Source of the DNA: Isurus oxyrinchus
Taxonomy: Eukaryota
Reading direction: 5' to 3'
NCBI GenBank assembly: GCA_026770705.1
Contig: JANJGN010000028.1
Coordinates: 15,996,001 to 16,060,000, forward strand
Length of the DNA: 64,000 nt
Below the pieces are notes generated by a model, which was given only the letters and a program-made list of their open reading frames with translations, did not search any database and had not been told where the DNA came from. The translations under genes and the position numbers were made by a program. Below, in pieces: positions 21,831 to 58,804 of this stretch (position 1 is the first letter of the stretch; every line of letters begins with the position of its first letter).

Positions 21831-21869
21831 AGTTGACGTTTCGAGTCCTCATGACCCTTCGACAGAACT
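21831..21869 (-). ncRNA. hammerhead-like motif, inverted copy in the left PLE arm
   Basis: Exact reverse complement of 25065-25103. Confidence 0.68.
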
Positions 21870-23064
21870 TGAGTTTGAGTCCAAGAAAGAGTTGAAATAT
21901 AAGCTGGTTTAAGGTGTGTGTGTGTGGGGGCCGGAGAGAGAGAGAGAGAGAGAGAGAGGTGGAGGGAGGGGTGTGGTTGTAGGGACAAACAAGCAGTGAT
22001 AGAAGCAGATCATCAAAAGATGTCAACAACAATAATACAAAAGAACACATAGGTGTTAAAGTTAAAGTTGGTGATATTATCTAAACAAATGTGCTAATTA
22101 AGAATGGATGGTAGGGCACTCAAGGTATAGCTCTAGTGGGGGTGTTTTTTTTTAAATAATGGAAATAGGTGGGAAAAGGAAAATCTTTATAAGTTATTGG
22201 AAAAAAAGGAAGGGGGAAACAGAATGGGGGTGGGAATGGGGGAGGGAGCTCACGACCTAAAGTTGTTGAATTCAGTATTCAGTCCGGAAGGCTGTAAAGT
22301 GCCTAGTCGGAAGATGAGGTGTTGTTCCTCCAGTTTGCGTTGGGCTTCACTGGAACAATGCAGCAAGCCAAGGACAGACATGTGGGCAAGAGAGCAGGGT
22401 GGAGAGTTAAATGGCAAGCGACAGGGAGGTTTGGGTCATTCTTGCGGACAGACCACAGGTGTTCTGCAAAGCGGTCGCCCAGTTTACGTTTGGTCTCTCC
22501 AATGTAGAGGAGACCACATTGGGAGCAACGAATGCAGTAGACTAAGTTGGGGGAAATGCAAGTGAAATGCTGCTTCACTTGAAAGGAATGTTTGGGTCCT
22601 TGGACGGTTTGGAGAGAGGAAGTGAAGGGGCAGGTGTTGCATCTTTTGCGTGGGCATGGGGTGGTGCCTAGGAGGGGGTTGAGGAGTAGGGGGTGATGGA
22701 GGAGTGGACCAGGGTGTCCCGGAGGGAGCGATCCCTACGGAATGCCGATAGGGGGGGTGAAGGGAAGATGTGTTTGGTGGTGGCATCATGCTGGAGTTGG
22801 TGGAAATGGCGGAGGATGATCCTTTGAATGCGGAGGCTGGTGGGGTGATAAGTGAGGACAAGGGGGACCCTATCATGTTTCTGGGAGGGAGGAGAAGGCG
22901 TGAGGGTGGATGCGCAGGAGATGGGCCAGACACGGTTGAGGGCCCTGTCAACGACCGTGAGTGGAAAACCTCGGTTAAGGAAGAAGGAGGACATGTCAGA
23001 GGAACTGTTTTTGAATGTAGCATCATCGGAACAGATGCGACGGAGGCGAAGGAACTGAGAGAAT

Positions 23065-24683
23065 CAGCTTCCAACCTGATAGTCGCCCAACCTCGGACGG
23101 CCCGCTTCTATCTCCTACCCAAAATCCACAAACAGAACTGCCCCAGTAGACTGATCGTCTCAGCTTGCTCCTGCCCCACAGAACTCATTTCTCGTTATCT
23201 TGACTCCCTTCTCTCTCCCCTTGTCCAGTCCCTTCCCACCTACATCCGTGATTCCTCTGACACCTTATGTCACATCAACAATTTCCAGTTCCCTGGCCCC
23301 AACCGCTTCCTCTTCACCATGGACGTCCAATCCCTCTACACCTTCATCCCCCACCAGGATGGTCTGAGGGCCCTTAGCTTCTTCCTCGAACAGAGGCCCG
23401 AACAATCCCCATCCACTACTACTCTCCTCCGTCTGGCTGAACTTGTTCTCACGCTGAACAATTTCTCCTTCAACTCCTCTCACTTACTCCAAATAAAAGG
23501 TGTGGCTATGGGTACCCGCATGGGCCCCAGCTATGCCTGTCTCTTTATGGGGTATGTGGAACATTCCTTGTTCCAGTCCTACTCCGGCCCCCTTCCACAA
23601 CTCTTTCTCCAGTACATCGATGATTACTTCGGTGCCGCTTCATGCTCTCGTCGGGACTTGGAAAAATTTATTAATTTTGCTTCCAATCTCTACCCCTCCA
23701 TCATTTTCACGTGGTCCATCTCTGACACTTCCCTTCCCTTCCTTGACCTCTCTGTCTCAGTCTCTGGTGATAGACTGTCCACCAATATCCATTACAAACC
23801 CACCGACTCCCACAGCTATCTCGACTACAGCTCCTCACACCCCGCTTCCTGTAAGGACTCCATCCCATTCTCCCAGTTCCTTCGCCTCCGTCGCATCTGT
23901 TCCGATGATGCTACCTTCAAAAACAGTTCCTCTGACATGTCCTCCTTCTTCCTTAACCGAGGTTTTCCACCCACAGTCGTTGACAGGGCCCTCAGCCGTG
24001 TCTGGCCCATCTCCTGCGCATCCGCCCTCATGCCTTCTCCTCCCTTACAGAAACATGATAGGGTCCCCCTTGTCCTCACTTATCACCCCACCAGCCTCCG
24101 CATTCAAAGGATCATCCTCCGCCATTTCCGCCAACTCCAGCATGATGCCACCACCAAACACATCTTCCCTTCACCCCCCCTATCGGCATTCCGTAGGGAT
24201 CGCTCCCTCCGGGACACCCTGGTCCACTCCTCCATCACCCCCTACTCCTCAACCCCCTCCTATGGCACCACCCCATGCCCACACAAAAGATGCAACACCT
24301 GCCCCTTCACTTCCTCTCTCCTCACCGTCCAAGGACCCAAACACTCCTTTCAAGTGAAGCAGCATTTCACTTGCATTTCCCCCAACTTAGTCTACTGCAT
24401 TCGTTGCTCCCAATGTGGTCTCCTTTACATTGGAGAGACCAAACGTAAACTGGGCGACCGCTTTGCAGAACACCTGCGGTCTGTCCGCAAGAATGACCCA
24501 AACCTCCCTGTCGCTTGCCATTTTAACTCTCCACCCTGCTCTCTTGCCCACATGTCTGTCCTTGGCTTGCTGCATTGTTCCAGTGAAGCCCAACGCAAAT
24601 TGGAGGAACAACACCTCCTCTTCCGACTAGGCACCTTACAGCCTTCCGGACTGAATACTGAATTCAACAACTTTAGGTCGTGA
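23065..24683 (+). CDS. PLE reverse transcriptase + GIY-YIG endonuclease (5'-truncated, open frame, ~539 codons)
   Basis: RT motifs: RFYLLPKIHK, YIRDS, FTMDVQSLYT, QIKGVAMGTRMGPSYACLFMG, QYIDD, LPFLD, SIPFSQFLRLRRICS. These are followed by a Cys/His linker (CPHKRCNTC...HFTC) and a GIY-YIG domain (NLVYCIRCSQCGLLYIGETKRKLGDRFAEH...GLN). The first ~98 aa of the listed 637-aa ORF come from the antisense arm and are not real. Confidence 0.92.
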
Positions 24684-25064
24684 GCTCCCTCCCCCATCCC
24701 CACCCCCTTTCTGTTTCCCCCTTCCTTTTTTTTCCAATAAATTATAAAGATTTTCCTTTTCCCACCTATTTCCATTATTTAAAAAAAAACACCCCCACTA
24801 GAGCTATACCTTGAGTGCCCTACCATCCATTCTTAATTAGCACATTCGTTTAGATAATATCACCAACTTTAACTTTAACACCTATGTGTTCTTTTGTACT
24901 ATTGTTGTTGACATCTTTTGATGATCTGCTTCTATCACTGCTTGTTTGTCCCTACAACCACAACCCCCCCTCCACCTGTCTCTCTCTCTCTCTCTCTCTC
25001 TCCGCCCCCCACACACACACCTTAAACCAGCTTATATTTCAACTCTTTCTTGGACTCGAACTCA

Positions 25065-25103
25065 AGTTCTGTCGAAGGGTCATGAGGACTCGAAACGTCA
25101 ACT
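25065..25103 (+). ncRNA. minimal type-I hammerhead-ribozyme-like motif in the PLE terminal repeat
   Basis: Layout: agtt (stem I) - CTGTCGA (variant of CUGANGA) - a - gggtc/atgag/gactc (stem II hairpin) - GAAA - CG - TC (cleavage triplet) - aact (stem I). Stem III is the loopless palindrome ACGT. PLE terminal repeats are known to carry such minimal hammerheads. Confidence 0.7.
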
Positions 25104-26816
25104 CTTTTCTTCTCCGCCGATGCTGCCAGACCTGCTGAGTTTTTCCAGGTAATTCTGTTTTTGTTTTTGTTTTGGATTTCCAGCATGCGCAGTTTTTTTG
25201 TTTTTATTTTTTAATTTTCAATACAGTTAATGGTACAACTCTTCAAGGTCTCTGCTTTCTGCCAGTTTGGCCTCTTGAGGATTACTTCACCATTGGCAGC
25301 TGTGCTTTCAGCTTCCTAGACTTGAAATTCCCTCCCTAAACCTCTCAACTTCTCCCTCCTTCTTTAAGATACCCACTAAAACCTACCTCTGAGCAAGCTT
25401 TAGTCACCTGTCCTGATATCTCTATGTGGCTCAGTGTCAAGTTCTGTTGATGCTCCAGTGAAGCATCTTGGGATGTTTTACCATGTTAAAGTCAACCGTG
25501 TAAATGTAATTGTTACATGGTTGTGCTCGTGCAAGGCCTCACTTCACTCATGTGTGGGAAAAGGTGGATTTCCTACTGCCACAGAGAGGGAAAGTGGCTG
25601 GTTCCACTTACCACAAAGCCAATTGTCCTGGAAGCATGGGTAGGAGCCATGAGGGAAAAAATCAGCAAATTTTAATACACACATAGTTTTAATAAATTCA
25701 TTAATGACCTTGTGGTTATTGTTAGGATTTTCACATCATCATTTACTCTTAGTGGCTTAAATGAGCATTGAAATCATCTTTTTGAGCTGTGAATTGAAGT
25801 GGTGCTGATTGTCTCATCTGCACCAAGACTGAATTAAGGAAATGATAATGAAGGACTTACTTGAGGATGTAATAAGGTGCTTATTCAAATGTGACCTTCC
25901 TTCCCCCTGCTTTATCTTGACATCGGAATTATAGAATTATACAGCACAGATGGAGGTTGTGTGGCCCATCGTGTTCATTCTGGCTCTTTGTTAGGGATCT
26001 AATTGATCCCATTCTCCTGCTATTTCCCCATGACCTCAAAATTTGTTCCCTCCAACTATTTGTCCAATGCTCTTTTGAATGTCACTATTGAGTCAGCTTC
26101 CAAAATGGCCTCCTTAATGTCTGCTCAACAATGTCTCCTAACAAGTGTAATTGCCTGTCTGACTCGTGGGGGACAGTGGCCTCCCTAGGCCCTGAACCCT
26201 CATGATCAAAGAGGCCGACACCAGGAACATGCCCTTTGCGCATTGGGGGCACACCCACGCCCACTCCCCTGAGAAGATAGCACCCACTTTCCTTCCCACC
26301 CTTTTAAAAGCTTTTTATTAACTGTCCGCAGCTGCCTGCGCATGCCTACCATACTGTGACATGAGCAATGCAATATTGGGGTAAATTGGCTCGTAAACAG
26401 GTTCAATTGATCCTTAATTATTTAATTACATATGGCGGGTGGGCTGCCGCTTTCGCTGCTTGCCCACCGCCTCCTCCTGCCCTGTGATATGGGGATAGAC
26501 TTGGGGTGGGTGAGAAGGTGGTGGGCCATCCACCTCTCATATTTTGCATTCCCTCCTCCCCCCAGCAAAAAAAAACATCCAGCAGGGTTGGGGGTGGGGG
26601 GGGGGGCATAAAGTCTAGCCCAAAGGCTCCAAACTCCCTAGTGCTTTTGTCGCTATCAGTTGACGCTCAGCTCCAGTTATGGAGGTCAGAGGGTCTGCTG
26701 AGGTGGTTTTAAATCATGAACAGTAAAGCCTTGCAGACCTCTCCACCCCTCCACCTCTCACTCCCCCTTTAAAACTCTCCTTAAAACCTACCTCTTTGAC
26801 CCTTTTGGTGACCTGT

Positions 26817-27901
26817 TGTGATGACCTTTGACCCAGAAGCAGTACAGTGAGGAAAATGTTTAATGACTTTACAATGTCTGTGGGGTCTGGAATTGGTTTT
26901 AAGAATTTTGAGAAGGCCTTTTAAGAGTTTGCATCAATTGTAAAGGGATTAATTGTAATTTTGTGTTTAATAAGAAATACTGTCCACTGTGACCTGGTGA
27001 CCCCTGATCTGGAAGCAGTACCAACATGTATGAAGTTAAGACAGAGGCCGTGTGGCAAAGGCTCAAACATGAAGGAAAACTACAAGTAGGAGAGGTGGAG
27101 AGTGTGAAGACAATCAGCACACAGATGCAGACACATAAAAGACAGACAAAGCTACAGCTTTAAAGGACAAAGGAGAGCTTAAGCAGAAAGAAGAATAAAA
27201 CAGGCACATTTACAAAGAGCTGCATATGCATAATACAGTTAAATGGGATGGAAACCTGAAGACAGTGTTAAATCAGGGATTGTGAAATAATTTTACTGCT
27301 GCTATGTGGTTTTGCCAGAGCTGACCAGACTGTTTAATGGGGTTTATTAAAGAGTTTGGATAAAGGAGTCTCTGGGGAATCTCCGCCATCAAGACTGTCA
27401 TGAACATAGCTAAGGTATGCCATTTGGGTGAGAGCTGTCTTCAAAGACCTCGGATAGAATACAGCTGCTGGTGAACCTGACTCAAGGGACAAATCCATTG
27501 AATAGGAAAGTGAGGGATCCTATCTACCAGAGGCTGAGTTAAAGAACTTTGGAACTGAACATTGTGCCATTTTGTGCAGGGAGTGATGAGGGTTCTTGTG
27601 GCTGTGTCACACACACAGTGATCAAAAACTGGATTGGATGCTAATTATTTGAAATGAAAACTTTCAAATCACTAGAGAATAAATTGGTTGTGTATCTTTA
27701 TTATATTAACGATATTTAAAGTAAAATTAACCTTTTTATTTAAAGTATCATTTGCCTGCTTAATTTATATTGGTTCTGATTTGTTTTAAAGTAAGAGAGT
27801 AAGTACAAAAAAGTGGTATTTTGTTGGTAATTTCTTAATTTGGGTGTCATTCACTAAATTTGGTTAATTTGGTTTACAGTTCCCCTACGGGAATAGTTAC
27901 A
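26817..27901 (+). mobile_element. solo LTR inserted in an L2 3' tail
   Basis: TG...CA termini and a perfect 4-bp TSD ctgt (26813-26816, 27902-27905). The interrupted L2 tail (cttaaaacctacctctttgac...ggtgac|ctgt|ctttatgtg...ggtgtcaaa) resumes after it. Confidence 0.75.
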
Positions 27902-28404
27902 CTGTCTTTATGTGCTTTGGTGTCAAATATTATTTGATAATGTTCCTGTGAGGCACCATGGGATGCTTTGTCACGTTTAAAGGTGCCATAGTAGCTGTTA
28001 AAGTCACCCACGAAGGTACTTGGTGTCAGTTATGAGGAAACATTGGAGAAACATGAACTTCTTAGACTTGGCAAGTAACTATCTTCAAGATGATCTTTAC
28101 AGAGATATATAACACAGTTAGGGGAATGGACAGTGTAAATCCATCACTTTAAATTGTGAGAATACGGCAATGGAATATGGTTTCAAACCACTAAATCAGG
28201 AGGTCATTCTTCACATACACACTGATCAAAAACTGGCTTGCGCTCCAATTACCCAAAGTGAGAACTTTCAAATCATAGAATCAGTTGTATAGATCATCAG
28301 GTGAGCTGTGGCTCCATCTATATAAATGAGTTACAATGGAACAAATGGCTCTCCTTGTCTGTCAGCACCTTGTGACGTTAATACTTTGCCATATCATAAT
28401 AGTG

Positions 28405-28690
28405 GTCTTGTACCGCAAATGTCCTTGCCTCTGAGACAGAAGCTCTGGGTTCAAGTCCCACTCCAGGACTTGATGACCAAGGAAGATGCACTCATAACAT
28501 GGACAAACAGGTTGAGTATCAACATGTAGATCCTTCCAACACATGCCAATGGCAGGAAGTAAGAGCGGGAGAGATTCCTGGTCAGCCATGTGATAGAAAG
28601 AACATTGGAGCCTCTATCATCACTATCCATAGCTCTAGGATACAACATGCCTACAGAAGTGCATGTTGCCACAGCAACTTGGAGTCCTTG
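28405..28690 (+). repeat. third tRNA-derived SINE family; second copy at ~49795-50075 (-)
   Basis: B box gggttcaagtccc and a shared body gggagagattcctggtcagccatgtgat...gtgcatgttgccayagcaact in both copies. Confidence 0.75.
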
Positions 28691-31125: not shown

Positions 31126-31759
31126 CTTCCCAGTTAAATTTGACGGAGGCTGTGACTTCGTGTTAATCTGCCAGTTGAATGCCAGCTTACGCACAAAGCA
31201 ACTCGAACAGTAGGAGCTATATTAAGAGTTGTGCACTAGTTTAAAGTAAAACCCTGGCAAAAGTAAGGGAGAAGGGACTTGCATCATGATGTTCAGGCAA
31301 CGTACGTTCATTGCCATTTGCTTAATATGGAGATAAGTCACAGTCTCAGCTGATGTGAAAAATTAAAGAATTCAGAACTGTTTTACATACTGAATTTTAG
31401 CTAAGGTATCCGAAGGGTTAACTGTTGAAATTCCTTCCAGAGAGAGAGAGGCTGGAGGGAAAAAATTGCCCTAATTAGATTGTGTGATGGCATCGTAAGC
31501 ACACGCTTCTTGAATTCATTTGTGACACTGCTTTTTATTTAGGCCATTTGTGGGGGGGTTTGACAAACCACCGGTTTTGGAGACTTGCTGGTCTCCAAAA
31601 CAAGGTACTGAGAAATCCTCTTGGGTAGATTTTCCACTTGCTCTGTATAGATTGTGGTCCTTTGCCTCACAAATCCATCCCTACACACTTAGGTGCAGAG
31701 GACTGAGGCAGAACTTGGGAAGAACTTAAACTTAGGAACTCCAAATAGTAGTACCATTG

Positions 31760-32095
31760 GAGGTGGTGGCATAGTGGTATTGTCACTGGACTAGTATTCC
31801 AGAGACCCAGGGTAATGCTCTGGGGTCCTGGATTTGAATCTCACAGAATTCAATAAAAATCTGGAATTAAAAGCCTAATGATGACCATGAAGCCATTATA
31901 GATTGTCATAAAAACCCATCTGGTTCAAAAATGTCCTCTAGGGAAAGAAATCTGCTGTCCTTACCCGGCCTGGTCTACATGTGACTCCAGACCCATAGTA
32001 ATGTGGTTGACTAAGTACCCTCAGAATAAGGGTAGTTAGGGATGGGCAATAAGTACTGCGCTAGTCAGCGATGCCCACATCCCATTAAAAATAAA
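31760..32095 (+). repeat. tRNA-derived SINE sharing the gggatgggcaataa LINE tail
   Basis: A box ggtggcatagtgg and a B-box-like ggatttgaatctc. Further copies lie at ~10843-11222 (-), 14990-15215 (-), 16765-17140 (+), 34855-35200 (-) and 53075-53330 (-). Confidence 0.82.
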
Positions 32096-33681: not shown

Positions 33682-34028
33682 ATTGTTGAAAAATGACATG
33701 CTGTCAAAGCTTTTTGCCTTGCACTCATCAGAACAGGTGCAAGAACACCAAATTTTAAAGGAAGCAACAATTTACATTGCATGAGGAAAGGGTGCTAATT
33801 GGTTGGTAAGTCAACCCTGATTGGTCAGAATTGCCATGGAGAATGCACAAGGAAACAATTGCTTCCATGCTTTTGTTTAATTCAAAAAAAGAAAATTTCC
33901 TGAACATGTTCCTTCTGCCTGCAGATTACAGGTCCCTGTGTATGAATGTATGTAGCTTCCAGCAAAGATAAGTGAGCCTGGCTGATAATCTTAAATTGGT
34001 TGCTTTCCAGCAATGCTCAAGCCCTGAA
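33682..34028. mobile_element. Poseidon-type PLE terminal fragment (antisense arm + short sense tail)
   Basis: Contains the antisense hammerhead-like gtcaaagctttttgccttgcactcatcagaac and shares sequence with 19680-19745. TSD cttaaatttaaat / cttaaagttaaat at 33669-33681 / 34029-34041. Confidence 0.72.
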
Positions 34029-34854: not shown

Positions 34855-35200
34855 TTTCTTTATTCATTCATGGGATGTGGGCATCGCTGGCCAGGCCAGC
34901 ATTTATTGCCCATCCCTAATTGACCATGTTCAGAGGACATTTAAGAGTCAACCACATCGCTGTGGGCTTGGAGTCACATGTAGGCCAGACCAGGTAAGGA
35001 CAGCAGATTTCCTTCCTTAAAGGGTTTTTGTGACAATCAACAATGGTTTCGTGGTCATCATCAGACTTTTAATTCCAGATTTTTTATTGAATTCAAATTC
35101 CACCACCTGCCGTGATAGGATTGGAACCCAGGTCCCCAGAGCATTACCCTGGGCCTCTGGATTACTGGTCCACTGACAACACCACTATGCCACCACTTCC
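34855..35200 (-). repeat. tRNA-derived SINE (same family as 31760-32095), well preserved
   Basis: Reverse complement: ggtggcatagtggttgtcagtggaccagtaatccagag...gggttccaatcc...tagggatgggcaataaatgctggcc. Confidence 0.85.
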
Positions 35201-37410: not shown

Positions 37411-37465
37411 CTTCCCGATACGTCCACCTCCTGACTCCACTGAACACCATCTACAGGGCACAAGT

Positions 37466-39674: not shown

Positions 39675-40630
39675 CTTACCATTTCCCTTTCACACTGGAT
39701 GGCATTACCATGGCTGAATCCCCCACCATCAACACCCTGGGAGGGGTCACCAGTGACCAGAAACTTAACTGGACCAGCCACATCTAATACTGTAGCTACA
39801 AAAGCAGGCCATAGTTGGCTATTCTGAAGCAAGGGATTGTAAGGACGTGAGGAATAGGAGCAGGAGTAGGCCATACCTGCTCCACCGTTCGATAAGACTG
39901 TGGCTGATCTGATACCAACCTCGACACCGCTTTCCTGCTTGTTCTCCATAATCCTTGACTCCCCTGTAGTTCAAAAGTCTCCCTCACTCAGCCTTGAATG
40001 TATTCACTCGCTCAGCCCCCGCAGCTCCCTGGGGTAGAGAATTCCAAATCTTCACAGCCTTCTCAGAGATGAAATTTCTCCTCATCTCCATCTTAAGAGA
40101 CACCTCCTGACTCCCCAAAGCTTGTCCACCATCTACAGTGTACAAGTCAGGAGTGTGATAGAATACTCCCCAACAATACTCAAGAAGCTCGACCACATCT
40201 AGGTCAAAGCAGCCAGCTTGATTGACACTCCATTCATCATGTTATACATTCACCACTGATGCACAGTGGCAGCAGTGTGTACCATAGACAAGGTGCAACT
40301 CACCAAGGCTCCTTCGGCAGCACCTTCCAAACCCATGACCTCTACCACCTAGAAGAACAAAGGCAGCAGATGCAGGGGAACACCACCACCTGCAAGTTCC
40401 CCTCCAAGCCACTGATGATCCTGACTTGGAAATATATCACCGTTCCTTCACTGTCACTGGGTCAAAATCCTGGAACTACCCTCCCAACCTAGCAGCACTG
40501 TCGGTGTACCCACACCACATGGACTGCTGCGGTTAAAGAAGGTGGCTTACCACAACCTTCTGGCGGGTAATTAGGGATGGGCAATAAATGCTGGCCTAGC
40601 CAGCGATGCTCACGTCCTGTCAATGAATAT
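39675..40630 (+). mobile_element. same LINE family, 3' part, split by a CR1
   Basis: ggcattaccatggctgaatcccccaccatcaac...ttagggatgggcaataaatgctggcc. Confidence 0.8.
39845..40098 (-). mobile_element. CR1 LINE 3' end nested in another LINE
   Basis: EMRRNFISEKAVKIWNSLPQ on the minus strand. Confidence 0.8.
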
Positions 40631-42501: not shown

Positions 42502-42864
42502 TGAGAATGAATTTCAAAATAAAAATCATTACCCCACCTACTCCCATCGGTATATGTGGTTTACCCTCGCATTTAATCCGAAGCCGGTTCACTCCATTGA
42601 TTTGGGATCATTTGTTCGTATGGAGGGAAATTACTTTTGAATAGGGTGCAACTCAATATTGTTTTGCAAGCCACATTTAGAGGCTAATTAAGATACTTAA
42701 AGACCTGCCCGTACAATCTTAAGGCTGGTGGACAGGCCAGGAGCCCCAGCGGGCTTCTGATAATACATGAAACCTCTTCCACCAGTGGGATGAAGTTTCA
42801 TGTCTGTTCTTAAAAAGTCTAATAAAGTTTATGTCATTTTTATTAACATGTCCCATCTCGTGTG

Positions 42865-43490
42865 GTGAGCTGCCTACTTAAACTGCTGCAGTCCATGTGA
42901 TGTAGGTACACCCACAGTGCTGTTAGGGAGGGAGTTCCAGGATTTTGATCCAGTGACAGTGAAGGAACGGTAATATATTTCCAAGTGGCTTGGAGGGGAA
43001 CTTCCAAGTGGTGGTGTTCCCATGTATCTGTTGCCCTTGTCCTTCTAGATAGTAGTGGCTATGGGTTTGGAAGGTGCTGCCTAAGGGGCTTTGGTGGGTT
43101 CCTGTTGTGCATCTAGTAGATGGTACACACTGCGGCCGCCGTGCATTGGTGTTGGAGGGAGTGAGTAATTATGGATGGGGTGCCAATCAAGTGGGCTGCT
43201 TTGTCCTGGTTGCTGTCAAGCTTCTTGAGTGTTGTCGGAGCTGCACTCATCCAGGCAAGTGGGGAGTGTTCCATCACACTCCTGACTTGTACCTTGTAGA
43301 TGGTGGACAGGCTTTGGGGACACAGGATGTGATTTATGCGCCACAGGATTCTTAGCCTCTGACCTGCTCTTGTAACCACAGTATTTATATGGCTAGTCCC
43401 ATTCAGTTTCTGGTCAATAGTAACCCCCACGATGTTGATAATGGGAGATTCAATGATGGTAATGCCATGGAATGTCAAGGGTGATAGTTA
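42865..43490 (-). mobile_element. same LINE family, 3' part
   Basis: ORF 43113-43478: ...INIVGVTIDQKLN...IYKVQVRSVMEHSPLAWMSAAPTTLKKLDSNQDKAAHLIG. Confidence 0.85.
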
Positions 43491-44260: not shown

Positions 44261-44446
44261 TTGTCCTGGTCAGTATTTATCCCTTAACAACATTACAAAA
44301 AACAGATTATATGGCCACTGTCTCATCGGTGATTGTGAGACGTTGCTATGTCCAAATTAGCCACCACTTTTCATTTTCTACATTACAACAGCCATTGCAC
44401 TTCAGAAGCACTTTGGCTGCAAAGCTCTTTTTCTTTGGGATACCCT

Positions 44447-44736
44447 GCTGAAAAGAAAGACATGTTGAAGCTTTTCATCATGCACTCATCAGGACAAATG
44501 CAAGAATGCCAAATTTCAAACAATCACAACAATTTCTACCGCAGTTTGAAATCTGGCATTCGTGCATTTGTCCTGATGGGTGCAAGATGAAAAGTTCATC
44601 AGGACAAATGCAAGAAAACCAAATTTCAAACCATCACAACAATATATACCACAAATGAAATTTCTTGCATTTGTCCTGATGAGTGCAAAACTAAAAGTTT
44701 TGACAACATGTCTCTCTTTTCAGCAATATTTAAGTT
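44447..44736. mobile_element. double fold-back PLE mini-element with four hammerhead-like modules
   Basis: Termini are inverted (gctgaaaagaaagacatgttg / caacatgtctctcttttcagc). Modules of type ttgtcCTGATGAgtgcaagayGAAAagctTCgacaa occur in -,+,-,+ order, the third truncated. A degenerate TSD, tttgggataccct / tttaggatatctt, lies inside a DeuSINE tail. Confidence 0.78.
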
Positions 44737-46695
44737 TTTAGGATATCTTGAGCTCATGAAAGGTGCTATAGAAATGAAAAACTTTTCTCTTGGTCTTGTC
44801 TGAAGTTTTCTAGCTTGATCAGATGGTTATCTACTGTCAGTTCTGATCTTTTATATTTAGCAAGTTCTCTGCATTCTGGAATTGAAGGAGGGGATTATGT
44901 GGTCCCAATATCAAGTAGGGGAAAAATGTATTCCTTCCTAATGATAGGTCGCTCGTATTGAGGCTTCAGTACGCCTGTATTACTTTGCCTGGCGCAGCAC
45001 AATGGATTGTTTAATTCAACATGCAATTATATCTACAATGCTGTTAAGCTTCTAATTTAAATCTTTGTTTAGCTGCGCAGTATAAATACACTTTGATTCC
45101 TGGGATGAATTTGTAAATTTACTTCTGACTCCCAACGGTTCGAAATGATTTGCTATCAAATTAATCTTTCCCTTCCATCTCGAAATTCGGAAAGATACCA
45201 CCACTCAGAGTTGCTACTCCGTGGCGTGGCATTTAAACCACGCAGGGAAAATTCGGGAACATTGCACACTTGTAGGAAAATTGGTGTGCCACATAGCTGG
45301 GGGGAGCAATGTGCCTATCACCCAGTCCTCAGGGCCGACCAGAGATTCAGACTACGTACACAATGAGCTAAATCCATTATCTCCCCAGACATCTGGATTC
45401 AAACCAGATGTTTAGCTTTGTGTTAGATTAAGTGTTTCTTATGAGCCGAGAGCTATCTGAGCACCTCGGTCTGGATGAAATCCATAAGCTGGGCTTTGCC
45501 GTTAAATCTTGTTTGACTCTATTCAGCCTGCTAGTAAACTAGGAAGTCCCCCTTTGCTGTGCAGATATACCTCATCTGTATTTCAAACTCAACGTTCAAT
45601 GAAAAAAGTTAAGCATTGGGAATAACTTTATCTTCTCATGCATGTGGAGGGTGACATCAAAAGGGTGCAAACGTGGGCGGACAGTTTTAGTGCTTTTGCA
45701 AACGTATTGCCCTGTTTGGGGAAAGAAGCACGTTAAACACCGGCGTATTCAGCTTCCTTTCTTCAATTCCCAATGTGGATTATGTCAAAAAGCCTGATTG
45801 GTGTAGCGAGGTGGGCTGTTCCGCACTGGGAAATGGTACGAAATGCTTCGAGAGAGGGGTTTGCACCTTTACAAAGTTGTTGGGAGGAAAAAAAGTAATT
45901 TTTAAATTCTCAGATATAAAAAGGACGCAATTGCCATGTTATTGGCAAAAAACCGAAATAATAATTTAATTGAAATGGTTCTTAAAATTAAATTTGCATA
46001 ATTTAGGTCTATTTACAGATTGCTTCCATCTCCCTATAGCAGGCACCAAGGCTTGTCTCCCTCTCCTGTTTCGAGCCAGAACTTGTGCTTTGAATGTTTG
46101 CATTCGCTGCACCAAGTTGTTGCCTGTTCCAATCCAGTTTGCGCCAGCGGCACGAACTTGGCTGCGGGTTCCTACCGAATCTGAGGTCATGCATCACCTT
46201 CAATAGCAGATGACCCTAGCCTAACTGAGACTGTATTGGCCACACTAAATGACTATCTGTTCTGACTACGCATTCCTTCAAGAGCTGCCAGCTCATTATA
46301 CCGAGCAGAGTCGAGGCGGATGTGATCAGGCTGATGGACGCAAACTCAAGAGTGCAGACCTGCCAACTACAACTTTAGTGACATCAAGTTTCTGACAAAA
46401 CTGACGATTAGAAGAGAGAATTGTTCTTTATTCACCCCCCGCCCCACCGAACATACAACAACTGCAACACTAGCTTGCATTTATATAGCACCCTTCATGC
46501 GTCTTAAAGCACTTCACAGGCGTGCTATCAAACAAAATTTCACACCCAGCCACATAAGGAGATAGGCAGATGACCAAAAGCTTGGTCAAAGAGGAGGTTT
46601 TAAGAAGAGTCTTATAGGAGGTAGAAGAGTAGAGAGGTGAAGAGGTTTAGGGTCCAGGCAGCTGAAGGCATTTCCACCAATGATGGAACAATTAA

Positions 46696-46790
46696 AACAG
46701 AAAATGCTGGAAAAACTCAGCAGGTCTGGCAACATCTGTGGAGAGAGAAACAGAGTTAACATTTCGAGTCCGTAAGACTCTTCAGAGCTG
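46696..46790 (-). mobile_element. Neptune-type PLE terminal fragment
   Basis: Reverse complement reads ctCTGAAGAgtcttacggactcGAAAtgttaactctg...gccagacctgctgagtttttccagc. TSD gatggaacaattaa / gatggaagaattaa at 46682-46695 / 46791-46804. Confidence 0.78.
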
Positions 46791-47074
46791 GATGGAAGAA
46801 TTAATATTGGTGATGTGTCAAAGGCTAGAATTGGAGAAGGGCAGACATCTTGGATGTAAATGATGGGTATTTCACACATAGTAGCTTACAAATTATTTTT
46901 GTTATCTTTGGTTAAGTGCTGAAGTAGAGACTTAAAGACTTGCATTTATATAGTGCCTTTTGCAGCCTCCCAAAGCACTTTACAGACATTGGAGTACTGT
47001 TGACGTCTAGTCACTGTAATGTAGGAAATGCAGCAGCTAATTTGCACACAGCAAGCTCCCACAAACAATGTGTT

Positions 47075-51191: not shown

Positions 51192-51419
51192 ATAGAACCT
51201 ACAGCACATAAACAAGCTGTTATAAATATATGATAGTCACCAATCAAATCCATTAGAAAATACAAAATGTGATTTACCCAAAGTGTGGTTAGAATGTGGA
51301 ATTTGCTACCAAATGGCGTATTTGAGGCAAATAACATTGATGCTGTTATGGGGAAGTCAGATAATTACATGAGGGAGAAAGGAATTGGAGCATATGCTGG
51401 TAGAGTTAGATACTAGTCT

Positions 51420-52310: not shown

Positions 52311-54088
52311 TGTCAGGATAGACTTATTATCATTTATTAAAATCAAATTGATGAACAATCTTCATTTGTTGAAGTGCGAAATAGGATAGCACACCGATAA
52401 AGATAACTAAATGCCAGTGGTAGGCAGCATGGTGTAATTGGTTTTACCAGCCAGGAAAGTTGCTGTTGAATTTGTGGGCCATCTATCTACATTGTGGCAT
52501 GCACTTCAGCACAGATCTCAACTCCCTCCACCTGCCTGTAAATTTCAGTCCTTTATCCGCACTTCGTTTGAGATTGGTGAATTTTAAAATGTTGCCTAAA
52601 CCTGTAATGGCTCATCCTAAATGTTTGGCTTTCAAATTAGAGCATTCAGAGGAAGGAGTTTAAATTGTTTTGTCCATGACAGGGATTAAAACCTAATTGT
52701 ACTTTGCTCTGTGCCTATGTGCTGCTGACTCATTACAGGAGACAATAGCAGACAAAAAGAAAAGAGAGACTTGCATTTATATAGTCCTTTCCACAACCAT
52801 CGGACTTCTCAAAGTGCTTTACAGCCAATTCTTTAACTTTGAGGTGTAAATTATTGTAATGTAATGTATTTGCTGTAAATTCCCTCAAGCAATAACATAA
52901 TGAGCACTAGATAATCTGGATTTTTTTGCCCAAATCTCTAGATTGAGATTTCTGACTAAGGAGGCACTGTCATGGAGCCATAGCTGCTTTTGGGGGTGTA
53001 GTTGTTCAGAAATCCAGTACAAATCATATCATTTTCTAGAATTTTTTCCCCCAGTTCATTGAATGCGGGCATTCCTGGCCCATTCCTCAGAGGGCAGTTA
53101 AGAGTCAACGACGTTGTTGTGAGTCTGGAGTCATGTATAGGACAGCAGACTGCATTCCATAAAGGACAGTGGTGAAAGAGGTGGGTTTTTACAACAATTG
53201 ACATCATCAGACTTTTAATTCCAGATTTTTATTGAATTCAAATTTCACCAAATGCCGTGGCGGGATTCGAACCACGGGTCCCCAGAGCATTACCCTGGGT
53301 CTCTGGAAAACTAGTCCAGTGACAATACCCTTGTGTGCAGTCCAGAACAGAAAATAAAAGTAAAGGTAATTTGATATATATTTAGTTGAAGGTTTAACTA
53401 CATACCAGAAAAATATAAGTGCTCATTACAATTTGACTCGCTTAATTTATATTTATGGAAATTATAAGACGTAATAAACTAATCTGTAGCTTATACATGA
53501 TTCTTAAAAAATAACAATATTGGGTTGGTTGAGCATTCAGGACATGGGGCAAGTAAACTGAAATGTTCATGATTCTGGCCATGTGTCCCATTTTCTTGGT
53601 TGAGTTTGGTTTGAAGTCTAATTGGTGAGAATTATATTCATCAGTTCTTGTTAAATCTCTTAATAAAAATATCCACTTCATGCTAGATATCTTGTCAGTG
53701 CATCATGAGCTTGCTGCAGTTTATGAAATGCTCTCGTTCTGTAGCTGAAATGAAGATTCAGCCCCAGGCTTTTAGGAGGGGCTCACTCAATCAGCAGAAA
53801 CTTCATGCAACCAATTTGGAGTTGTTGAACATGGCGGTAGCCAATTAAGGCACTTGGCACAATAATTAAGTTTTAGAACCAATTCAAAGGGCAGAGTTCA
53901 AACTGAGACTGCTGAATAAAACAGCCTGAGCCGATTCCTTTAGTTTCATGCTTTTACGCAGTGAGATTACTTTCACAGTTCTGAACAAAGTGCCAAAGAT
54001 GAACTGGGATGATGCAGTGAGTTACTGACTGTCTGATAACCTCTAGAACCTGGCTGTTCAATCCATCCCAGGGTGTTGGATTAAGCAT

Positions 54089-54256
54089 AGAAAGTGCTGG
54101 AAAAACCGCGCAGCTCTTCCGAAGAAGAGTCACGTTTGACTCGAAATGGTAACTCTGTTTCTCGTTCCACAGATGCTGCCAGACCTGCTGAGTTTTTCCA
54201 GCACTTTCTGTTTTGTTTTGGATCTCGAGCATCCACAGTACTGTGCTTATACTTTA
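54089..54256 (+). mobile_element. Neptune-type PLE terminal fold-back fragment
   Basis: A short antisense arm (agaaagtgctggaaaaa) is followed by the sense terminus ccgaagaagagtcacgtttgactcgaaa...gagtttttccagcactttctg and the tail. Degenerate TSD gtgttggattaagcat / gcgttggataaaacat. Confidence 0.75.
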
Positions 54257-54394
54257 GCGTTGGATAAAACATGTTCTTTTGCTGATGGTTATAGGATCCT
54301 ACATGAAATTGATTTTAGCAAACCCTTAAATCAGATCCTGGGGTATAACAAGATTTGTCTGGAATGTGTCGGCTGTGGTTTGGTGCATTGCACT

Positions 54395-54920
54395 CTAGCC
54401 TCTGCGTCAAAAGGTTGTGGTTCAATCTCCACTTCAGAGAGTTGGAACGGGATTTTCAGGCCCCTTCCACTGCCGGGAGCTTCCAGTCCCCTGAAAGTCA
54501 ATGGACTTTTGGCTGGGCCGCCGATTCCCCCACAGCAGGCCCCTTCATGACAAGGCTGGAAATTCCCAGCCTTGTGCACATAATCTCGGTTGATGCTCCA
54601 GTGCAGTGTTGAGGGAGCACTGCCATGAGGTGCCAGCTATCTGTTAGATGAAACTGAGGCCCTCTCAAATAGATGTCAAAGATCCTGCGGCACTGTTTGA
54701 AGAAGAGCAGGGGGGTTCTCCCTGGTGTTATCATCACCTAAAACGGATTGTCTAGTCATTATCACATTGCTGTTTGTGGAACCTTGCTGTGCACAAGCTG
54801 GGTGCTGGGTTTTCTACATTACAACAGTGACTACACTCAAAAGGAATTACCTCATTGGCTGTAAAGAACTTTGGGACATCCTGAGGTTGTGAAAGACGCT
54901 ATATAAATTAAAGTCTTCCT
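54395..54920 (+). repeat. DeuSINE interrupted by a MITE
   Basis: aaagatcctgcggcactgtttgaagaagagcagggg...ttgctgtttgtggaaccttgctgtgc...gaaagacgctatataaat. Confidence 0.82.
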
Positions 54921-56852
54921 TTATTTTTCCTATAGTTGGCACTAGGTTGTCAGCCTTGCCTGGACAAGCCGAGAACGCAAGAACATGAGAAACAGTTGAT
55001 CTGAAAAACCAAAGTGCCATATTGGTATGGGTGAAGGGACTTCCTCCTAAGCTTTGGGTGAACAGACGTTGCTGGGTCAGAGGAGACCTTTGCACTTGAC
55101 CTGGATAAGTACTTGAACAAATTTCTTGATGGCACTGGTTACATGGAAAAAATAACATCTCAGCATTGACACCTTCACCTCGACCAGCAGTAAATTCACA
55201 GATAGCAAAAGCAGGAAAAGGTCCACCCCACCCTTTCCATTTACTCTGGTCTCGTGCCCAACTGCATACAGGGTCAGGACACCCTACCAGCTGTTTACAT
55301 CTGTCAAGCCTGGATTGGGTCCTATTGAAACTGTTCCAAAATAAACATTAAGGCTGACTATCATTGGAAAGCTCTGAAAAGTTTCTGTCTTGCAAGTTTG
55401 ATGATTGCAAGGTGGTGGACTCCCTTTTGAAGAGTCAGCAGTTTTTTGTTTCCTTAAGAATAGCGGATGCTATCTGTGTGGATAATTGCAATGGCTACAC
55501 ATACAACTATCAGCCTGTTGTCCCTTTAAATAAACAAGTAGAGCTTTTGATATGTCACAATGGATAACGTCTCTACTCCCCTTTAGTCTAAATGTATTAA
55601 GGGATGTGTGATGGGGAAGACTTCAGAAATTCAGTGACTTTTTATCATCCTTCAGGTTATCTTTGGCAATGCTCCCATGAGTTGGGATGATGCATTGCTT
55701 CATGATGAAAGGAATGTTGTGGCAACTGTGCAGGCCTACTGATCCCTCTTATCAGCTTCCTGGCTCTTGACTTGCATACTCTTCACCTCTCTTGATTCCG
55801 TTCCACTTTTGAGGTATTATATTACTTTGAGCTGTTCGCTAAATTGTGGCAGCTGAATGCGAAGGCCAAAGTGTGACAGGACCTGAGTGTGCCACTCCTG
55901 TGATGTGTGTGCTTTATACAACAATTTGTAAAGTAGATCTCCCGAGGTGTTGCTCTTGGTGGGTCAAAGATCATGCAGCTCTATGACGAGAACATCTCAA
56001 CAAATAAGATGAAATAAGTACAGGAAGGGCATACCATTGAGGGTGTGCCGCACTGTCAGAGGTGCTGTCTGTTGGATGCAAAGGATGCCCACTTGGGTGG
56101 ATACCAAAGGCCCTATGGCATCATTCAAAGAAGAACAAGGGAGTTCTCCCCGGCGGCCTGGTCAAAATTGAACCTAAAACAGATGATCTGATCATTATTA
56201 CCTTGCTGTTTGTGGACCTTGTGTGCAAGTTGGGTGCTATGTTTTCGACATTACAAGAGTGACCATACTTCAAAGTAAGTAAGTACTTTATTGGCTGGCC
56301 ATATACTTTAAAGACATTATAGAGGGAGAAAGAAACAGGAGATCTCTGCATATTGTCAGTCTGGTTTTTGTGAGACTTACTGGTAAGTCTGAGCCCCAAA
56401 GCAACCTTGAACAATGTAGCCTTTCTGTTAGCATTTTAGCCAAAGGCTAACTTGGAGTATAAAATTTCATGTCACCAACTACTGGGGTAGAATTTTATGG
56501 CCCCCATCGCGGTAGGGGGCAGGCCCATAAAATGCAGCAAGCGATTCAAAAGCCCGTCAACTTCAGCAAGACCGGTGGGGCATTAAATGTAGATCTTAAC
56601 AAATGCATATCTCAACCATGTGGACTTTTCGGTTCATCCCAGACTGCATGTAGATATGTAGTGGATCAAAAATTGAAAACTTTCCTTAGAAAAGAAAAAA
56701 CTCAATATAATTCTCTGACCTTAAAAGGCACCTTGATGAGATTGCCTTTTCTGAGGGAAATTCCTTGTTGCTCTCGCTATGTTTAAGGTTACCTAGCATC
56801 CTACCTCCTTGCTGATGTCAGATTCATGATGTCAGTGAATGTTAATTGTATA

Positions 56853-56987
56853 ACAAAAACAGAATTAACTGGAAAAACTCAGCAGGTCTGGCAACATCGG
56901 CGGAGAAGAAAAGAGTTGACGTTTCGAGTCCTCGTGACCCTTCAGCAGGATTTCCAGAATCTGCAGTTTTTTGTTTTTATCTCAATA
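56853..56987. mobile_element. Neptune-type PLE terminal fragment (antisense arm + sense tail)
   Basis: Near-identical to 21770-21865, followed by the tail gatttccagaatctgcagttttttgtttttat. Perfect TSD ttaattgtata at 56842-56852 and 56988-56998. Confidence 0.85.
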
Positions 56988-58275
56988 TTAATTGTATACT
57001 GTTTAATTGTGTGCAGGTGGTGAGTATTAATTTGGGTTGCACTTGAACATATATAAAGACATATTTATTAAAAATGTGTGCGGTTGAGTTAGGAGGTGTA
57101 AGCTTGTAATGGTTAACTTGGTAAATAAATGTGGGACTGAGTAAAGATTGGCTCCAGTACTATCCTTCACCAACTGGCTTTTTATAAAGTAGTATTGAAC
57201 TGGCCATTAATAGATGTGTAAGTTATCTAAACATACTGTGCATATATATATAAAAACTGTGTTTTGTGTACAAGTTCATATTAGAACTACAGTGTGTTGA
57301 AGCCTCACTGTAATGTGTACTGTGGACAAATGTGTGCTATGTTGTAAAGCATGAGTTGCATCATTGAAAGGACCACACTGAGCTAATGGACAAAATGATC
57401 AGAAAACACAGTTTCCTCTGCAGAGGATGTATAGGTGGATGACGAAAGATTTAATTGACTGGGAATGACATGAGAACGAAATTCTCCTAGTCGTTCAGAT
57501 CCATTTTAGATCCAACAATGCTGTCTATGCTGAAGCTAATTGAAGAGGTGAGCAGCATGTCAATAAGGTGATCTCTTTGTTGAATTCCCAGTACATACTG
57601 GCTTGGTTCTATTCACCACCAAGGCAGGCTTGGGATGTCAAAAGTGTTCTACTTGGAGAATGAAGCATTAGAAATCATTACCACTTGGTCTGAATAATAC
57701 TGCTAATTTAAGAATGATAGTAAGGCTGTATTTTCTTTAAAAATCAAAACCTATTCATCACAGAGAGCGAGTGCAAATTGCTTTATAATGCACCCAGGAC
57801 ATCCTTTTACCTTTTGAAACAATGACAGGGCAAGCTTGTCCACAGGGCACACGTAGCCAGGGTGAGGAGAGACAGGTGATACTGCTTTAGCAGTGTATTT
57901 GAGCACAATTGCATTTGAGAATGCCCGAGAAGTAATAGCATGCCTGGATTCCAATTACATAGTCATTAATCTAGAGAGCAAGCGCCGTCTTTCACTTCTC
58001 GATCCTTCCTCCCTTCACTGTTTCTTGCTTTGAGTTTCCGAAACACTCTGTTTTAGAAGTTCACCTGCCTCAATCATATCGTCATCTGTATCAATCTTTT
58101 CCCCTCACCTGATAGAAACCCTTTTTATTTGCTATAGCCTTCTAAAGTAGCATAACGTAAATTCTCTTATGTACACTGATGACATCAGCTCTACCGCACT
58201 AACATCGCTCTGACCTCTCCACTCCCCCTGTGTTGTCAGGCATCTTGAAGGAGCAGAAATTTCCGACAGTTAAAT

Positions 58276-58804
58276 TTTTTTTTTTGAAAAATATACTTTA
58301 TTCATAAAATATCTGGGAAAACATTACAGAACATTTCAAAATCACCATCACAAAAGTACAATCAGATTCAACTTTTACACATGGATCCCGAGGTGCATCA
58401 ATACAATCAATGAATATTACAGTCATTTCAATACGGTCAGTGCAGACAATCAGACAATGGTATTGGACTCAATACAAAACCAGAATTACCTGGAAAAACT
58501 CAGCAGGTCTGGCAGCATCGGCGGAGAAGAAAAGAGTTGACGTTTCGAGTCCTCATGACCCTTCGACAGAACTGTCGAAGGGTCATGAGGACTCGAAACG
58601 TCAACTCTTTTCTTCTCCGCCGATGCTGCCAGACCTGCTGAGTTTTTCCAGGTAATTCTGTTTTTATTTTGGATTTCCAGCATCCGCAGTTTTTTTGTTT
58701 TTATCCAAAGGTACTGGACTTATCAACATACATCATGTTGCACTCTGAGGTGCTTCAGTACAATTATAACACAATTAGTATTTAATGCATTTAATTCAAT
58801 TCAT
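58276..58804 (-). mobile_element. polyadenylated retroposon 3' end (L1/Tx1-like), containing the PLE hairpin
   Basis: The minus strand ends gAATAAAgtatatttttc followed by poly(A). TSD ttaaat at 58270-58275 / 58805-58810, splitting an L2 RT fragment. Confidence 0.65.
58474..58705. mobile_element. Neptune-type PLE hairpin mini-element (perfect 89-bp palindrome + tail)
   Basis: 58481-58569 is the exact reverse complement of 58572-58660, followed by the ~45-nt tail. TSD caatggtattggact / caaaggtactggact at 58455-58469 / 58706-58720. Confidence 0.88.

What the first reader, a model, noticed from the sequence alone, without database searches (positions are those of the whole stretch)
21831..58705. 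Family of minimal hammerhead-bearing fold-back retro-inserts, each with an 11-16-bp TSD
Seen: besides the large element, six 95-350-bp inserts (33682, 44447, 46696, 54089, 56853, 58474) consist almost only of the PLE terminal module. Five follow one grammar: TSD, antisense terminus starting just inside the 3' end, sense terminus with its extra tail, TSD. 46696 has only the antisense arm. The grammar holds in two unrelated PLE clades. TSDs are AT-rich and several contain TTAA. Inference: fold-back integration is the normal outcome here, and it scatters hairpin and ribozyme cassettes at about one per 9 kb. These are either extreme truncation products or a non-autonomous, retrozyme-like family. 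This is my best candidate for an under-described system in the window.
Basis: partly seen in the sequence, partly recalled or inferred. Interest (0 to 1): 0.85.

Follow-up and report, generated by a model that had tools for sequence, protein, structure and literature searches.

The report
Penelope retrotransposon fold-back end fragments
The short hairpin-shaped inserts are real, but they are the usual by-products of how Penelope-like retrotransposons insert (an inverted end copy, a short tail on one side only, a duplicated AT-rich target), seen here at very high copy number in a probable shark genome and carrying a hammerhead-like motif whose catalytic core is not canonical.

Summary
Partly confirmed. 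One 3.4-kb Penelope-like element (PLE; RT plus GIY-YIG ORF) sits at 21763-25210 as a head-to-head fold-back with a perfect 12-bp TSD. Four short inserts (46696, 54089, 56853, 58474) are homologous to its last 100-140 nt. Three of these four are fold-backs, with the roughly 32-45-nt tail on one arm only. TSDs of 12-15 bp, AT-rich and mostly containing TTAA, are supported for the large element and five of six short inserts. The 44447 TSD is not supported. The second family (33682, 44447) has no coding partner here and its boundaries are ambiguous.

No Rfam hammerhead is found at any threshold. The module has min-HHR architecture, but every family-B copy has a non-canonical core.

This grammar is already described for PLEs (PMC3846280, PMC8557442, PMC11167929, PMC4209133).

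Two details are new. Arm 5' ends cluster at 25064-25069, both in the window and in contigs of two organisms. Each junction differs. So these are not random truncations. Nor are they an amplifying hairpin family. They are best read as pLTR-length run-off cDNAs.

First readers of this scan noted the same elements on other pieces of this genome.

The parts
21751..21762 (.). Left TSD of the large PLE (TTAATTTTCAAT)
   Evidence: 12/12 match with 25211-25222; 0 of 1,500 random pairs as good.
21764..23064 (-). Antisense, tail-less arm of the large PLE. It is the reverse complement of 23867-25170.
   Evidence: 97.3% over 1,305 aligned columns; 29 mismatches, 19 of them transitions. It shares the rare T at ref 24528 with the sense arm.
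23065..25210 (+). Sense arm of the large PLE. It holds a 5'-truncated ORF (RT plus GIY-YIG, 23067-24683), the 3' UTR, the terminal module and the tail.
   Evidence: RVT_1 and GIY-YIG hits, YIDD and GIY-YIG motifs, Atlas PLE-type clusters, and 60-67% identity to elasmobranch proteins.
25032..25039 (+). TATA-like box (TTATATTT), about 30 bp upstream of the recurrent 5' end
   Evidence: Read from the sequence. Its function is inferred.
25069..25099 (+). Min-hammerhead-like motif. It reads CUGUCGA, an extra A, a 5-bp helix II, GAAA, then CG and UC. The core is non-canonical (A6 changed to U).
   Evidence: own descriptor. No Rfam hit. No alternative letter listed at 25069-25096 table 3.
25125..25148 (+). 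24-nt block that is invariant in all seven family-B arms, old and young. It is a candidate RT recognition element.
   Evidence: 7 matches with 0 mismatches, 0 expected by chance.
25171..25207 (+). Tail: the extra 3' segment present on only one arm of each fold-back
25211..25222 (.). Right TSD of the large PLE
46696..46790 (-). Single tail-less arm of an older subfamily. Its 14-bp TSD lies at 46682-46695 and 46791-46804.
54089..54258 (+). Fold-back: a 29-nt antisense arm (54089-54117), then a sense arm with core CCGAAGA and a tail. Its 14-bp TSD (12/14) lies at 54075-54088 and 54259-54272.
56853..56983 (-). Antisense arm 56853-56949 (core CUGCUGA), then a sense piece that is the tail only (56950-56983). 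Its 15-bp TSD (14/15) lies at 56838-56852 and 56984-56998.
58470..58705 (+). Near-perfect palindrome: arms 58470-58569 and 58572-58671 (97% complementary, 2 nt between them), plus a tail to 58705. Its 15-bp TSD (13/15) lies at 58455-58469 and 58706-58720.
33682..34028 (-). Family-A insert. It has an antisense terminal module with CUGAUGA (33682 to about 33800) and a possible short sense piece at the right end. A 13-bp direct repeat (12/13) flanks it.
   Evidence: The boundaries are ambiguous.
44446..44736 (+). Family-A double fold-back: four alternating modules in the order antisense, sense, antisense, sense. The TSD is not supported.
   Evidence: (pair I22).

Best explanation
The inserts are dead-on-arrival products of target-primed reverse transcription by endonuclease-bearing Penelope-like elements.

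What is shown:
- A young PLE with an RT and GIY-YIG ORF is present in the window.
- Its last 100-140 nt recur as short inserts bounded by 12-15-bp AT-rich TSDs.
- Most of these inserts are head-to-head pairs.
- One arm starts at an internal zone (ref 25156-25175). The other starts about 32-45 nt further 3' (near ref 25207), so exactly one arm carries the tail.
- Arm 5' ends pile up at ref 25064-25069.

What is inferred:
1. The PLE enzyme cuts both target strands with a 12-15-bp stagger.
2. Each free 3' end primes cDNA on the PLE RNA, one at each of the two adjacent internal start sites. The two arms of the large element share a rare variant, so they probably copied the same RNA or RNAs from the same source copy.
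3. The two cDNAs are joined head to head by a template jump.
4. The recurrent 5' end is a real RNA 5' end, most simply the pLTR transcription start. A TATA-like box lies about 30 bp upstream.
5. On that reading a short insert is a run-off copy of one pLTR-length leader, made when RT starts at the start site nearest the 5' end of the RNA.

The hammerhead-like motif travels as a passenger. Its core is non-canonical in the dominant young subfamily, so classical self-cleavage is probably not needed for spread.
For: PLE identity:
- Pfam RVT_1 (E=6.5e-5) plus GIY-YIG (E=6e-4) lie in one ORF.
- Atlas nearest clusters carry HTH_animal, RVT_1 and GIY-YIG at score 0.97.
- YIDD and GIY-YIG motifs are visible in the translation.
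- There are 840 homologues. The closest named ones are elasmobranch proteins at 60-67% identity.

Architecture:
- 46696 shows that the internal site primes directly from the target, because its TSD abuts the arm end.

Shared source:
- Both arms of the large element carry T at ref 24528, where about 92-100% of family depth has A.
- Both arms also agree at eight common polymorphic sites.

Discrete 5' end:
- Five of nine arm ends in the window lie at 25064-25069.
- In contigs of organisms A and B, depth rises about 3-5 fold across 25066.
- Place 25065 is the best-supported loose end: 111, 113 and 27 contigs. The preceding letters are heterogeneous and AT-rich, with agreement 0.37-0.58.

No amplified junction:
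- Joints involving 25065 have partners at 25100, 25102, 25112 and 25120 and fillers CC, CCCCC and AACTG.
- Every joint listed in table 5 rests on one or two contigs at depth 15-120.

Literature:
- PMC3846280 describes the inverted pLTR, 37 bp shorter, with a 31-bp tail on one side, a TSD and solo pLTRs.
- PMC8557442 describes the inverted 5'-truncated copy and a tail often at one end only.
- PMC11167929 shows that both strands are cleaved and extended, that there are two adjacent internal start sites, and that the HHR is dispensable in vitro.
- PMC4209133 describes dual min-HHRs 100-700 bp apart on opposite strands.
Against: - The start-site reading rests on the clustered ends and one TATA-like box.
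- Contig depth is summed k-mer depth, not copy number. Palindromic junctions may assemble badly in 31-mer contigs, so an amplified perfect-palindrome junction could be missed.
- Read laying skipped 25147-25260 as repeat, so the tail asymmetry was not tested genome-wide. It rests on four family-B fold-backs; P is about 0.06 if the sites were chosen independently with equal odds.
- A self-priming (snap-back) origin, favoured in PMC3846280, is not excluded for the near-perfect palindrome at 58470-58705.
- An earlier unverified note (s1-868562) reads another hairpin insert as an edited hairpin RNA copied back into DNA. If right, whole hairpins can sometimes be templates.
Confidence: 0.75

Rival explanations
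1. A non-autonomous, self-amplifying mini-family (retrozyme-like or SINE-like). The 100-140-nt module, or the hairpin itself, is transcribed and copied again by PLE RT acting in trans.
For: - The unit has a discrete 5' end, and the terminal module is about 3-5 fold in excess of the 3' UTR.
- A 24-nt block is invariant across old and young copies.
- pLTRs suffice in cis for mobilisation in trans (PMC3846280).
- Animal retrozymes are proposed to derive from pLTRs (bioRxiv 10.64898/2026.07.22.740005).
Against: - All five family-B loci differ in architecture.
- The joints listed each rest on one or two contigs at low depth, with variable partners and fillers.
- The units start downstream of the TATA-like box, so they carry no evident promoter.
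- Antisense arms always begin in the internal start zone directly next to the TSD. That fits fresh priming, not copying of a hairpin RNA.
- There are no tandem direct repeats.
- The hammerhead core is non-canonical.
Confidence: 0.12
2. Self-priming (snap-back). One cDNA folds back on itself and is copied, giving the second arm. Only one target strand primes on RNA.
For: - The 58474 palindrome has only 2 nt between its arms.
- Arms share a rare variant.
- Palindromes at inverted junctions were read this way in PMC3846280.
Against: - The copied arm would have to stop 32-45 nt short of its template end every time. That stopping point is exactly the zone where the single-arm insert 46696 begins by direct priming.
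- 56853 pairs a full arm with a tail-only piece, which snap-back does not produce.
- Both strands are extended in vitro (PMC11167929).
Confidence: 0.1
3. The hairpins are not retro-inserts. They are MITE-like DNA transposons with terminal inverted repeats, palindromes formed at the DNA level, or assembly artefacts.
For: - Each hairpin looks like an inverted repeat flanked by a direct repeat, often containing TTAA.
- An unrelated, perfect 230-bp palindrome elsewhere in the window (12661-13144) shows that palindromes of another origin exist.
Against: - The arms are homologous to the 3' end of a coding PLE.
- TSD length varies from 12 to 15 bp.
- The tail sits on one side only.
- A single-arm insert with a TSD exists.
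- The same module is held by runs from 11 studies and two organisms.
Confidence: 0.03

Closest known systems
Canonical EN+ Penelope-like element insertion structure: inverted pLTR, direct pLTR with a 30-40-bp tail, and a TSD (Arkhipova et al. 2013, PMC3846280; Craig et al. 2021, PMC8557442)
   Same: An inverted 5'-truncated copy lies at the 5' side. The tail is on one end only, and the tail-less arm is about 32-45 nt shorter. The TSD is short and variable in AT-rich DNA. [quoted passage not shown] 5' truncation is heavy.
   Different: Most copies here contain nothing but the two pLTR-length arms, with no ORF between them, and the 5' boundary is sharp. Copy number is very high (40,000-70,000 contigs laid; the tool warns this is no copy number).
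[quoted passage not shown] 2024, PMC11167929)
   Same: There are two adjacent internal start zones whose spacing equals the tail. Both target strands are used. The target is AT-rich, and ATT is present in all six TSDs. The order along the element is hammerhead motif, then binding region, then start sites. Hammerhead catalysis is not required.
   Different: The start zones here end T-rich, G-interrupted runs, not an AC-rich stem-loop. In the four fold-backs seen, the two sites are used one each, whereas the in vitro work found no difference between strands.
Min-HHRs of metazoan PLEs (Cervera and de la Pena 2014, PMC4209133)
   Same: An unpaired nucleotide lies between positions 9 and 10.1. G10.1 pairs with C11.1. 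Helix II is 5-6 bp. Positions 15.2/16.2 are palindromic (ACGU), so helix III can form only in a dimer. Helix I is short. Motifs occur as pairs on opposite strands 100-700 bp apart.
   Different: The cores are CUGUCGA, CUGCUGA or CCGAAGA instead of CUGANGA. Family A keeps CUGAUGA and an AGCU loop 3, but helix II is poor in the decayed copies.
Non-LTR retrozymes of animals (Cervera and de la Pena 2020; Li et al. 2026 preprint)
   Same: They are short non-coding units related to PLE pLTRs that carry type-I hammerhead motifs.
   Different: Retrozymes are head-to-tail tandem arrays with active ribozymes that yield circular RNA. These are inverted pairs or single units, each with its own TSD, and the core is non-canonical.
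L1 twin-priming inversions
   Same: The second target strand also primes cDNA, giving an inverted 5' part inside one TSD.
   Different: In L1 the two parts are neighbouring, non-overlapping stretches of one RNA. Here both arms copy the same 3' terminal stretch.

Membership tests
EN+ Penelope-like element (insertion products) | A single ORF with a PLE-type RT followed by a C-terminal GIY-YIG endonuclease | tested here: met
   The Pfam hits are each below the curated cut-off, but they are co-linear and are backed by the Atlas clusters and 840 homologues. The ORF is 5'-truncated (538 codons against about 890-930 in full-length relatives).
EN+ Penelope-like element (insertion products) | An inverted 5'-truncated copy or pLTR adjacent to the 5' side, inside one TSD | tested here: met
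   (1.3-kb arm at 97.3%). (12/12 TSD). for the short inserts.
EN+ Penelope-like element (insertion products) | An optional 30-40-bp tail at one end of the insert | tested here: met
   the tail is about 32-45 nt and sits on exactly one arm in four of four family-B fold-backs.
EN+ Penelope-like element (insertion products) | A hammerhead ribozyme motif in the pLTR | tested here: inconclusive
   The min-HHR architecture is present (alignment A1). Every family-B core has one non-canonical position. Rfam gives no hit. Activity was not tested.
EN+ Penelope-like element (insertion products) | Direct pLTRs flanking a full-length ORF (partial tandem) | not testable with these tools
Non-LTR retrozyme | Head-to-tail tandem repeats of the hammerhead-bearing unit | tested here: not met
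   TRF finds none at 44350-44800. Family-B inserts are inverted or single. Family A at 44447 shows only one 82%-identical duplication of about 110 nt.
Non-LTR retrozyme | A canonical, active type-I hammerhead and circular RNA products | tested here: not met
   The core is non-canonical in family B and Rfam gives no hit. Circular RNA could not be tested: only contigs were available for the RNA runs.
L1-type twin priming | The inverted and direct parts are adjacent, non-overlapping segments of the template | tested here: not met
   The arms overlap fully.
MITE / DNA transposon | Symmetric terminal inverted repeats and a TSD of fixed length | tested here: not met
   TSD length is 12-15 bp, the tail sits on one side only, and the arms are homologous to the PLE 3' end.

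The most novel reading that the evidence does not exclude
The short inserts are a natural record of the unsolved PLE integration step. A dimeric RT-endonuclease would load on one capped RNA with its two active sites at the two adjacent start zones. It would prime from both target strands, hence exactly one tail. It would run off at the pLTR transcription start (ref about 25065, sometimes with untemplated C filler) and join the two cDNAs head to head. Most events would use the start sites nearest the 5' end of the mRNA, which makes pLTR-only hairpins the main product. A young subfamily with a fixed CUGUCGA core would then show in vivo that canonical hammerhead catalysis is dispensable for PLE spread.
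Probability: 0.3. Interest if true: 0.5.

Novelty: new member of a known kind. Interest (0 to 1): 0.3.

Why it matters
How PLEs integrate is still unsettled, and the only biochemistry comes from one lizard element. This genome appears to hold a very large number of young copies whose junctions, tails and TSDs are still legible. A full census could therefore answer three questions. Are the two start sites used in a coordinated way? Do cDNAs end at a real RNA 5' end? Is the hammerhead needed? For annotation, these 100-230-bp hairpins should be masked as PLE pLTR fragments. They give spurious microRNA-precursor matches in Rfam and could be miscalled as MITEs or miRNA genes.

Tried and rejected
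- Rfam at gathering score on the whole window, and at E<=10 on 44380-44780 and 58400-58760, gave no hammerhead. It gave only chance hairpin matches to miRNA families.
- My own hammerhead descriptor with a canonical core gave 0 hits in 64 kb.
- The module RNA 25064-25170 folds no better than shuffled sequence (z = +2.4), so it has no stable monomer structure.
- I tested whether the tail is a tandem duplicate of the preceding segment. The match is not significant (125 of 2,000 shuffles).
- I looked for a TSD at 44447 with wider boundaries. Nothing beat 9/11.
- Inverted pairs at 31759-32088/34867-35200 and at 40101-40554/42861-43331 were checked as possible further PLE fold-backs. They have no PLE coding similarity, and the first pair looks tRNA-SINE-like.
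- The PDB sequence search gave no hit.
- Raw DNA reads of organism D (run X21) laid nothing on the stretch, so they gave no test.
- Read laying skipped 25147-25260 as repeat, so the tail could not be surveyed.
No full-length relative could be fetched to locate the 5' pLTR.
- A literature search for shark PLE fold-backs found nothing specific.

Full report
**What is there**

The window is eukaryotic, at about 39-53% G+C. The closest named relatives of its PLE protein are from whale shark, a stingray, bamboo shark and zebra shark at 60-67% identity. I did not verify the species.

BLAST of the inserts against the window separates two families. Family B comprises 46696, 54089, 56853, 58474 and both ends of the large element. 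Family A comprises 33682 and 44447.

**The large element**

- A self-comparison shows that 21764-23064 is the reverse complement of 23867-25170, at 97.3% over 1,305 aligned columns. The element is therefore a head-to-head fold-back with a 1.3-kb antisense arm and a 2.1-kb sense arm (23065 to about 25207).
- The listed ORF 22770-24683 is chimeric. Only 23067-24683 is sense. That part reads through 538 codons with YIDD and GIY-YIG motifs.
- Its identity is supported by Pfam RVT_1 plus GIY-YIG, by Atlas clusters carrying HTH_animal, RVT_1 and GIY-YIG at 0.97, and by 840 homologues.
- A perfect 12-bp TSD flanks it.
- The arms differ at 29 sites, of which 19 are transitions and 8 are in CpG context. 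That pattern fits decay after insertion.
- Both arms carry T at ref 24528, where about 92-100% of family depth has A. They also agree at eight common polymorphic sites. The two arms therefore came from one source.

**The short family-B inserts** (coordinates are given relative to the large sense arm)

| Insert | Structure | TSD |
|---|---|---|
| 46696-46790 | one tail-less arm | 13/14 |
| 54089-54258 | 29-nt antisense arm, then sense arm with tail | 12/14 |
| 56853-56983 | 97-nt antisense arm, then a sense piece that is the tail only | 14/15 |
| 58470-58705 | two 100-nt arms 97% complementary with 2 nt between them, then a tail | 13/15 |

- Tail-less arms begin at ref 25156-25175, directly against the TSD. 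Tailed arms end near ref 25207. The tail is therefore about 32-45 nt, and it sits on exactly one arm in all four fold-backs.
- The TSDs are 77% A+T (my count from the sequences). All six contain ATT and five of six contain TTAA. With six sites this fits the reported preference but does not test it.

**A discrete 5' end**

Nine arm 5' ends can be read in the window. They lie at 23065, 23867, about 25128 and 25177, and five lie at 25064-25069.

I laid contigs of two organisms, plus one possible RNA run, on 24400-25260.

- Tens of thousands of contigs matched.
- Summed depth rose about 3-5 fold across 25066.
- Place 25065 was the best-supported loose end, with 111, 113 and 27 contigs. The letters before it were heterogeneous and AT-rich (agreement 0.37-0.58).
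- Joints with 25065 on one side had partners at 25100, 25102, 25112 and 25120 and fillers CC, CCCCC and AACTG.
- Every joint listed in table 5 rested on one or two contigs at depth 15-120.

At the same time the sharp boundary rules out random truncation. A TATA-like box at 25032-25039 lies about 30 bp upstream. I therefore read about 25065 as the pLTR transcription start, and the units as run-off cDNAs of one pLTR-length leader. This step is inferred, not shown.

Caveats: contig depth is not copy number, palindromes assemble poorly, and 25147-25260 was skipped as repeat.

**The hammerhead**

- Rfam finds no hammerhead at gathering score or at E<=10. It returns only chance hairpin matches to miRNA models.
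- A descriptor following the min-HHR of PMC4209133 finds no canonical core in the window. With one core change allowed it finds all family-B modules.
- In those modules an extra A follows the core. Helix II is 5-6 bp, closed by G10.1-C11.1. Then come GAAA, CG and UC, so helix III (ACGU) can form only between two copies.
- The cores are CUGUCGA in four young arms, CUGCUGA in 56853 and CCGAAGA in 54089. 46696 has a 3-nt deletion.
- Stems are kept while loops differ between subfamilies.
- No alternative letter is listed at 25069-25096 among the contigs. The variant core is therefore the family state, as several first-reader notes on other pieces also say.
- This agrees with the in vitro finding that hammerhead mutants still insert (PMC11167929).
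- A 24-nt block (25125-25148) between the motif and the start zone is identical in all seven arms, including the two arms that are only about 82% like the rest. It is a plausible RT recognition element.

**Family A**

- The arms carry CUGAUGA, GAAA in two of four copies, a palindromic AGCU loop 3 and a 5-bp helix I. One compensatory change (U:A to C:G) separates the two loci. Helix II is poor.
- 44447 is a four-segment alternation (antisense, sense, antisense, sense). Its arms are 80-92% alike and it has no significant TSD.
- 33682 has a significant but low-complexity 13-bp direct repeat and no clear inverted repeat. A possible short sense piece at its right end rests on an 11/12 match.
- There is no coding partner in the window, so the claim of 'two unrelated PLE clades' is untested. 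A decayed GIY-YIG fragment of another PLE lies at 2556-2791.

**Mechanism**

The single-arm insert shows that the internal zone primes directly from the target. The simplest account of the fold-backs is that both target strands prime on the RNA, one at each zone, and that the two cDNAs are then joined. This matches the in vitro behaviour of the Anolis element (PMC11167929).

Snap-back self-priming (PMC3846280) is not excluded for the 58474 palindrome. It does not explain the regular stop at the internal zone, and it does not explain the tail-only piece of 56853.

**Comparison with what is known**

Every element of the grammar is already published for PLEs (PMC3846280, PMC8557442, PMC4209133, PMC11167929). 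The inserts fail the tests for retrozymes, L1 twin priming and MITEs.

What may be worth a census is the sharp 5' boundary, the strict one-tail rule and the fixed variant core in a very abundant young family. First readers noted the same elements on other pieces of this genome (s1-865442, s1-870054, s1-871485, s1-865521). One follow-up, which I did not test, reads a hypermutated hairpin insert as an edited hairpin RNA copied back into DNA (s1-868562). If correct, it would raise the odds of the amplifying-hairpin rival.

Noticed in passing
window 12661-13144: A perfect palindrome: 230-nt arms that are 100% complementary with a 24-nt spacer. It has no similarity to the PLE modules. It may be a very recent inverted duplication or an assembly or long-read hairpin artefact.
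   Followed up: partly
window 2556-2791 (+): A decayed GIY-YIG-region fragment of a second PLE lineage, at 44-75% amino-acid identity to the young element over three short pieces.
   Followed up: no
window 25125-25148 and six other arms: The 24-nt block GCCAGACCTGCTGAGTTTTTCCAG is identical in all seven family-B arms, although the old arms are only about 82% like the young ones. It is a candidate RT-binding element.
   Followed up: partly
   Followed up: partly
window 31759-32088 and 34867-35200: Two tRNA-SINE-like repeats in inverted orientation bracket the 33682 insert. They are not PLE-related.
   Followed up: partly
window 40101-40554 and 42861-43331: About 450 bp of 80-91% inverted repeats lie 2.3-3 kb apart. 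The ORFs between them have no Pfam hit. Their nature is unknown.
   Followed up: partly
window 25099/25100 (tables 5 and 5c): Three of the strand or go-back joints listed have one side at 25100-25102. That is just after the predicted hammerhead cleavage site (C25099). Some joints carry C-only fillers. This is a weak hint of cleaved or capped RNA ends, with too few cases to judge.
   Followed up: no
run X17: An RNA run labelled coral metagenome holds about half of the sampled words of the PLE terminus. This suggests contamination, a shared PLE lineage or a mislabelled sample.
   Followed up: no
window 44465-44601 and 58530-58611: The fold-backs score E = 1e-7 to 1e-9 against several Rfam miRNA-precursor models, all far below their gathering scores. 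They are a source of false miRNA calls.
   Followed up: yes
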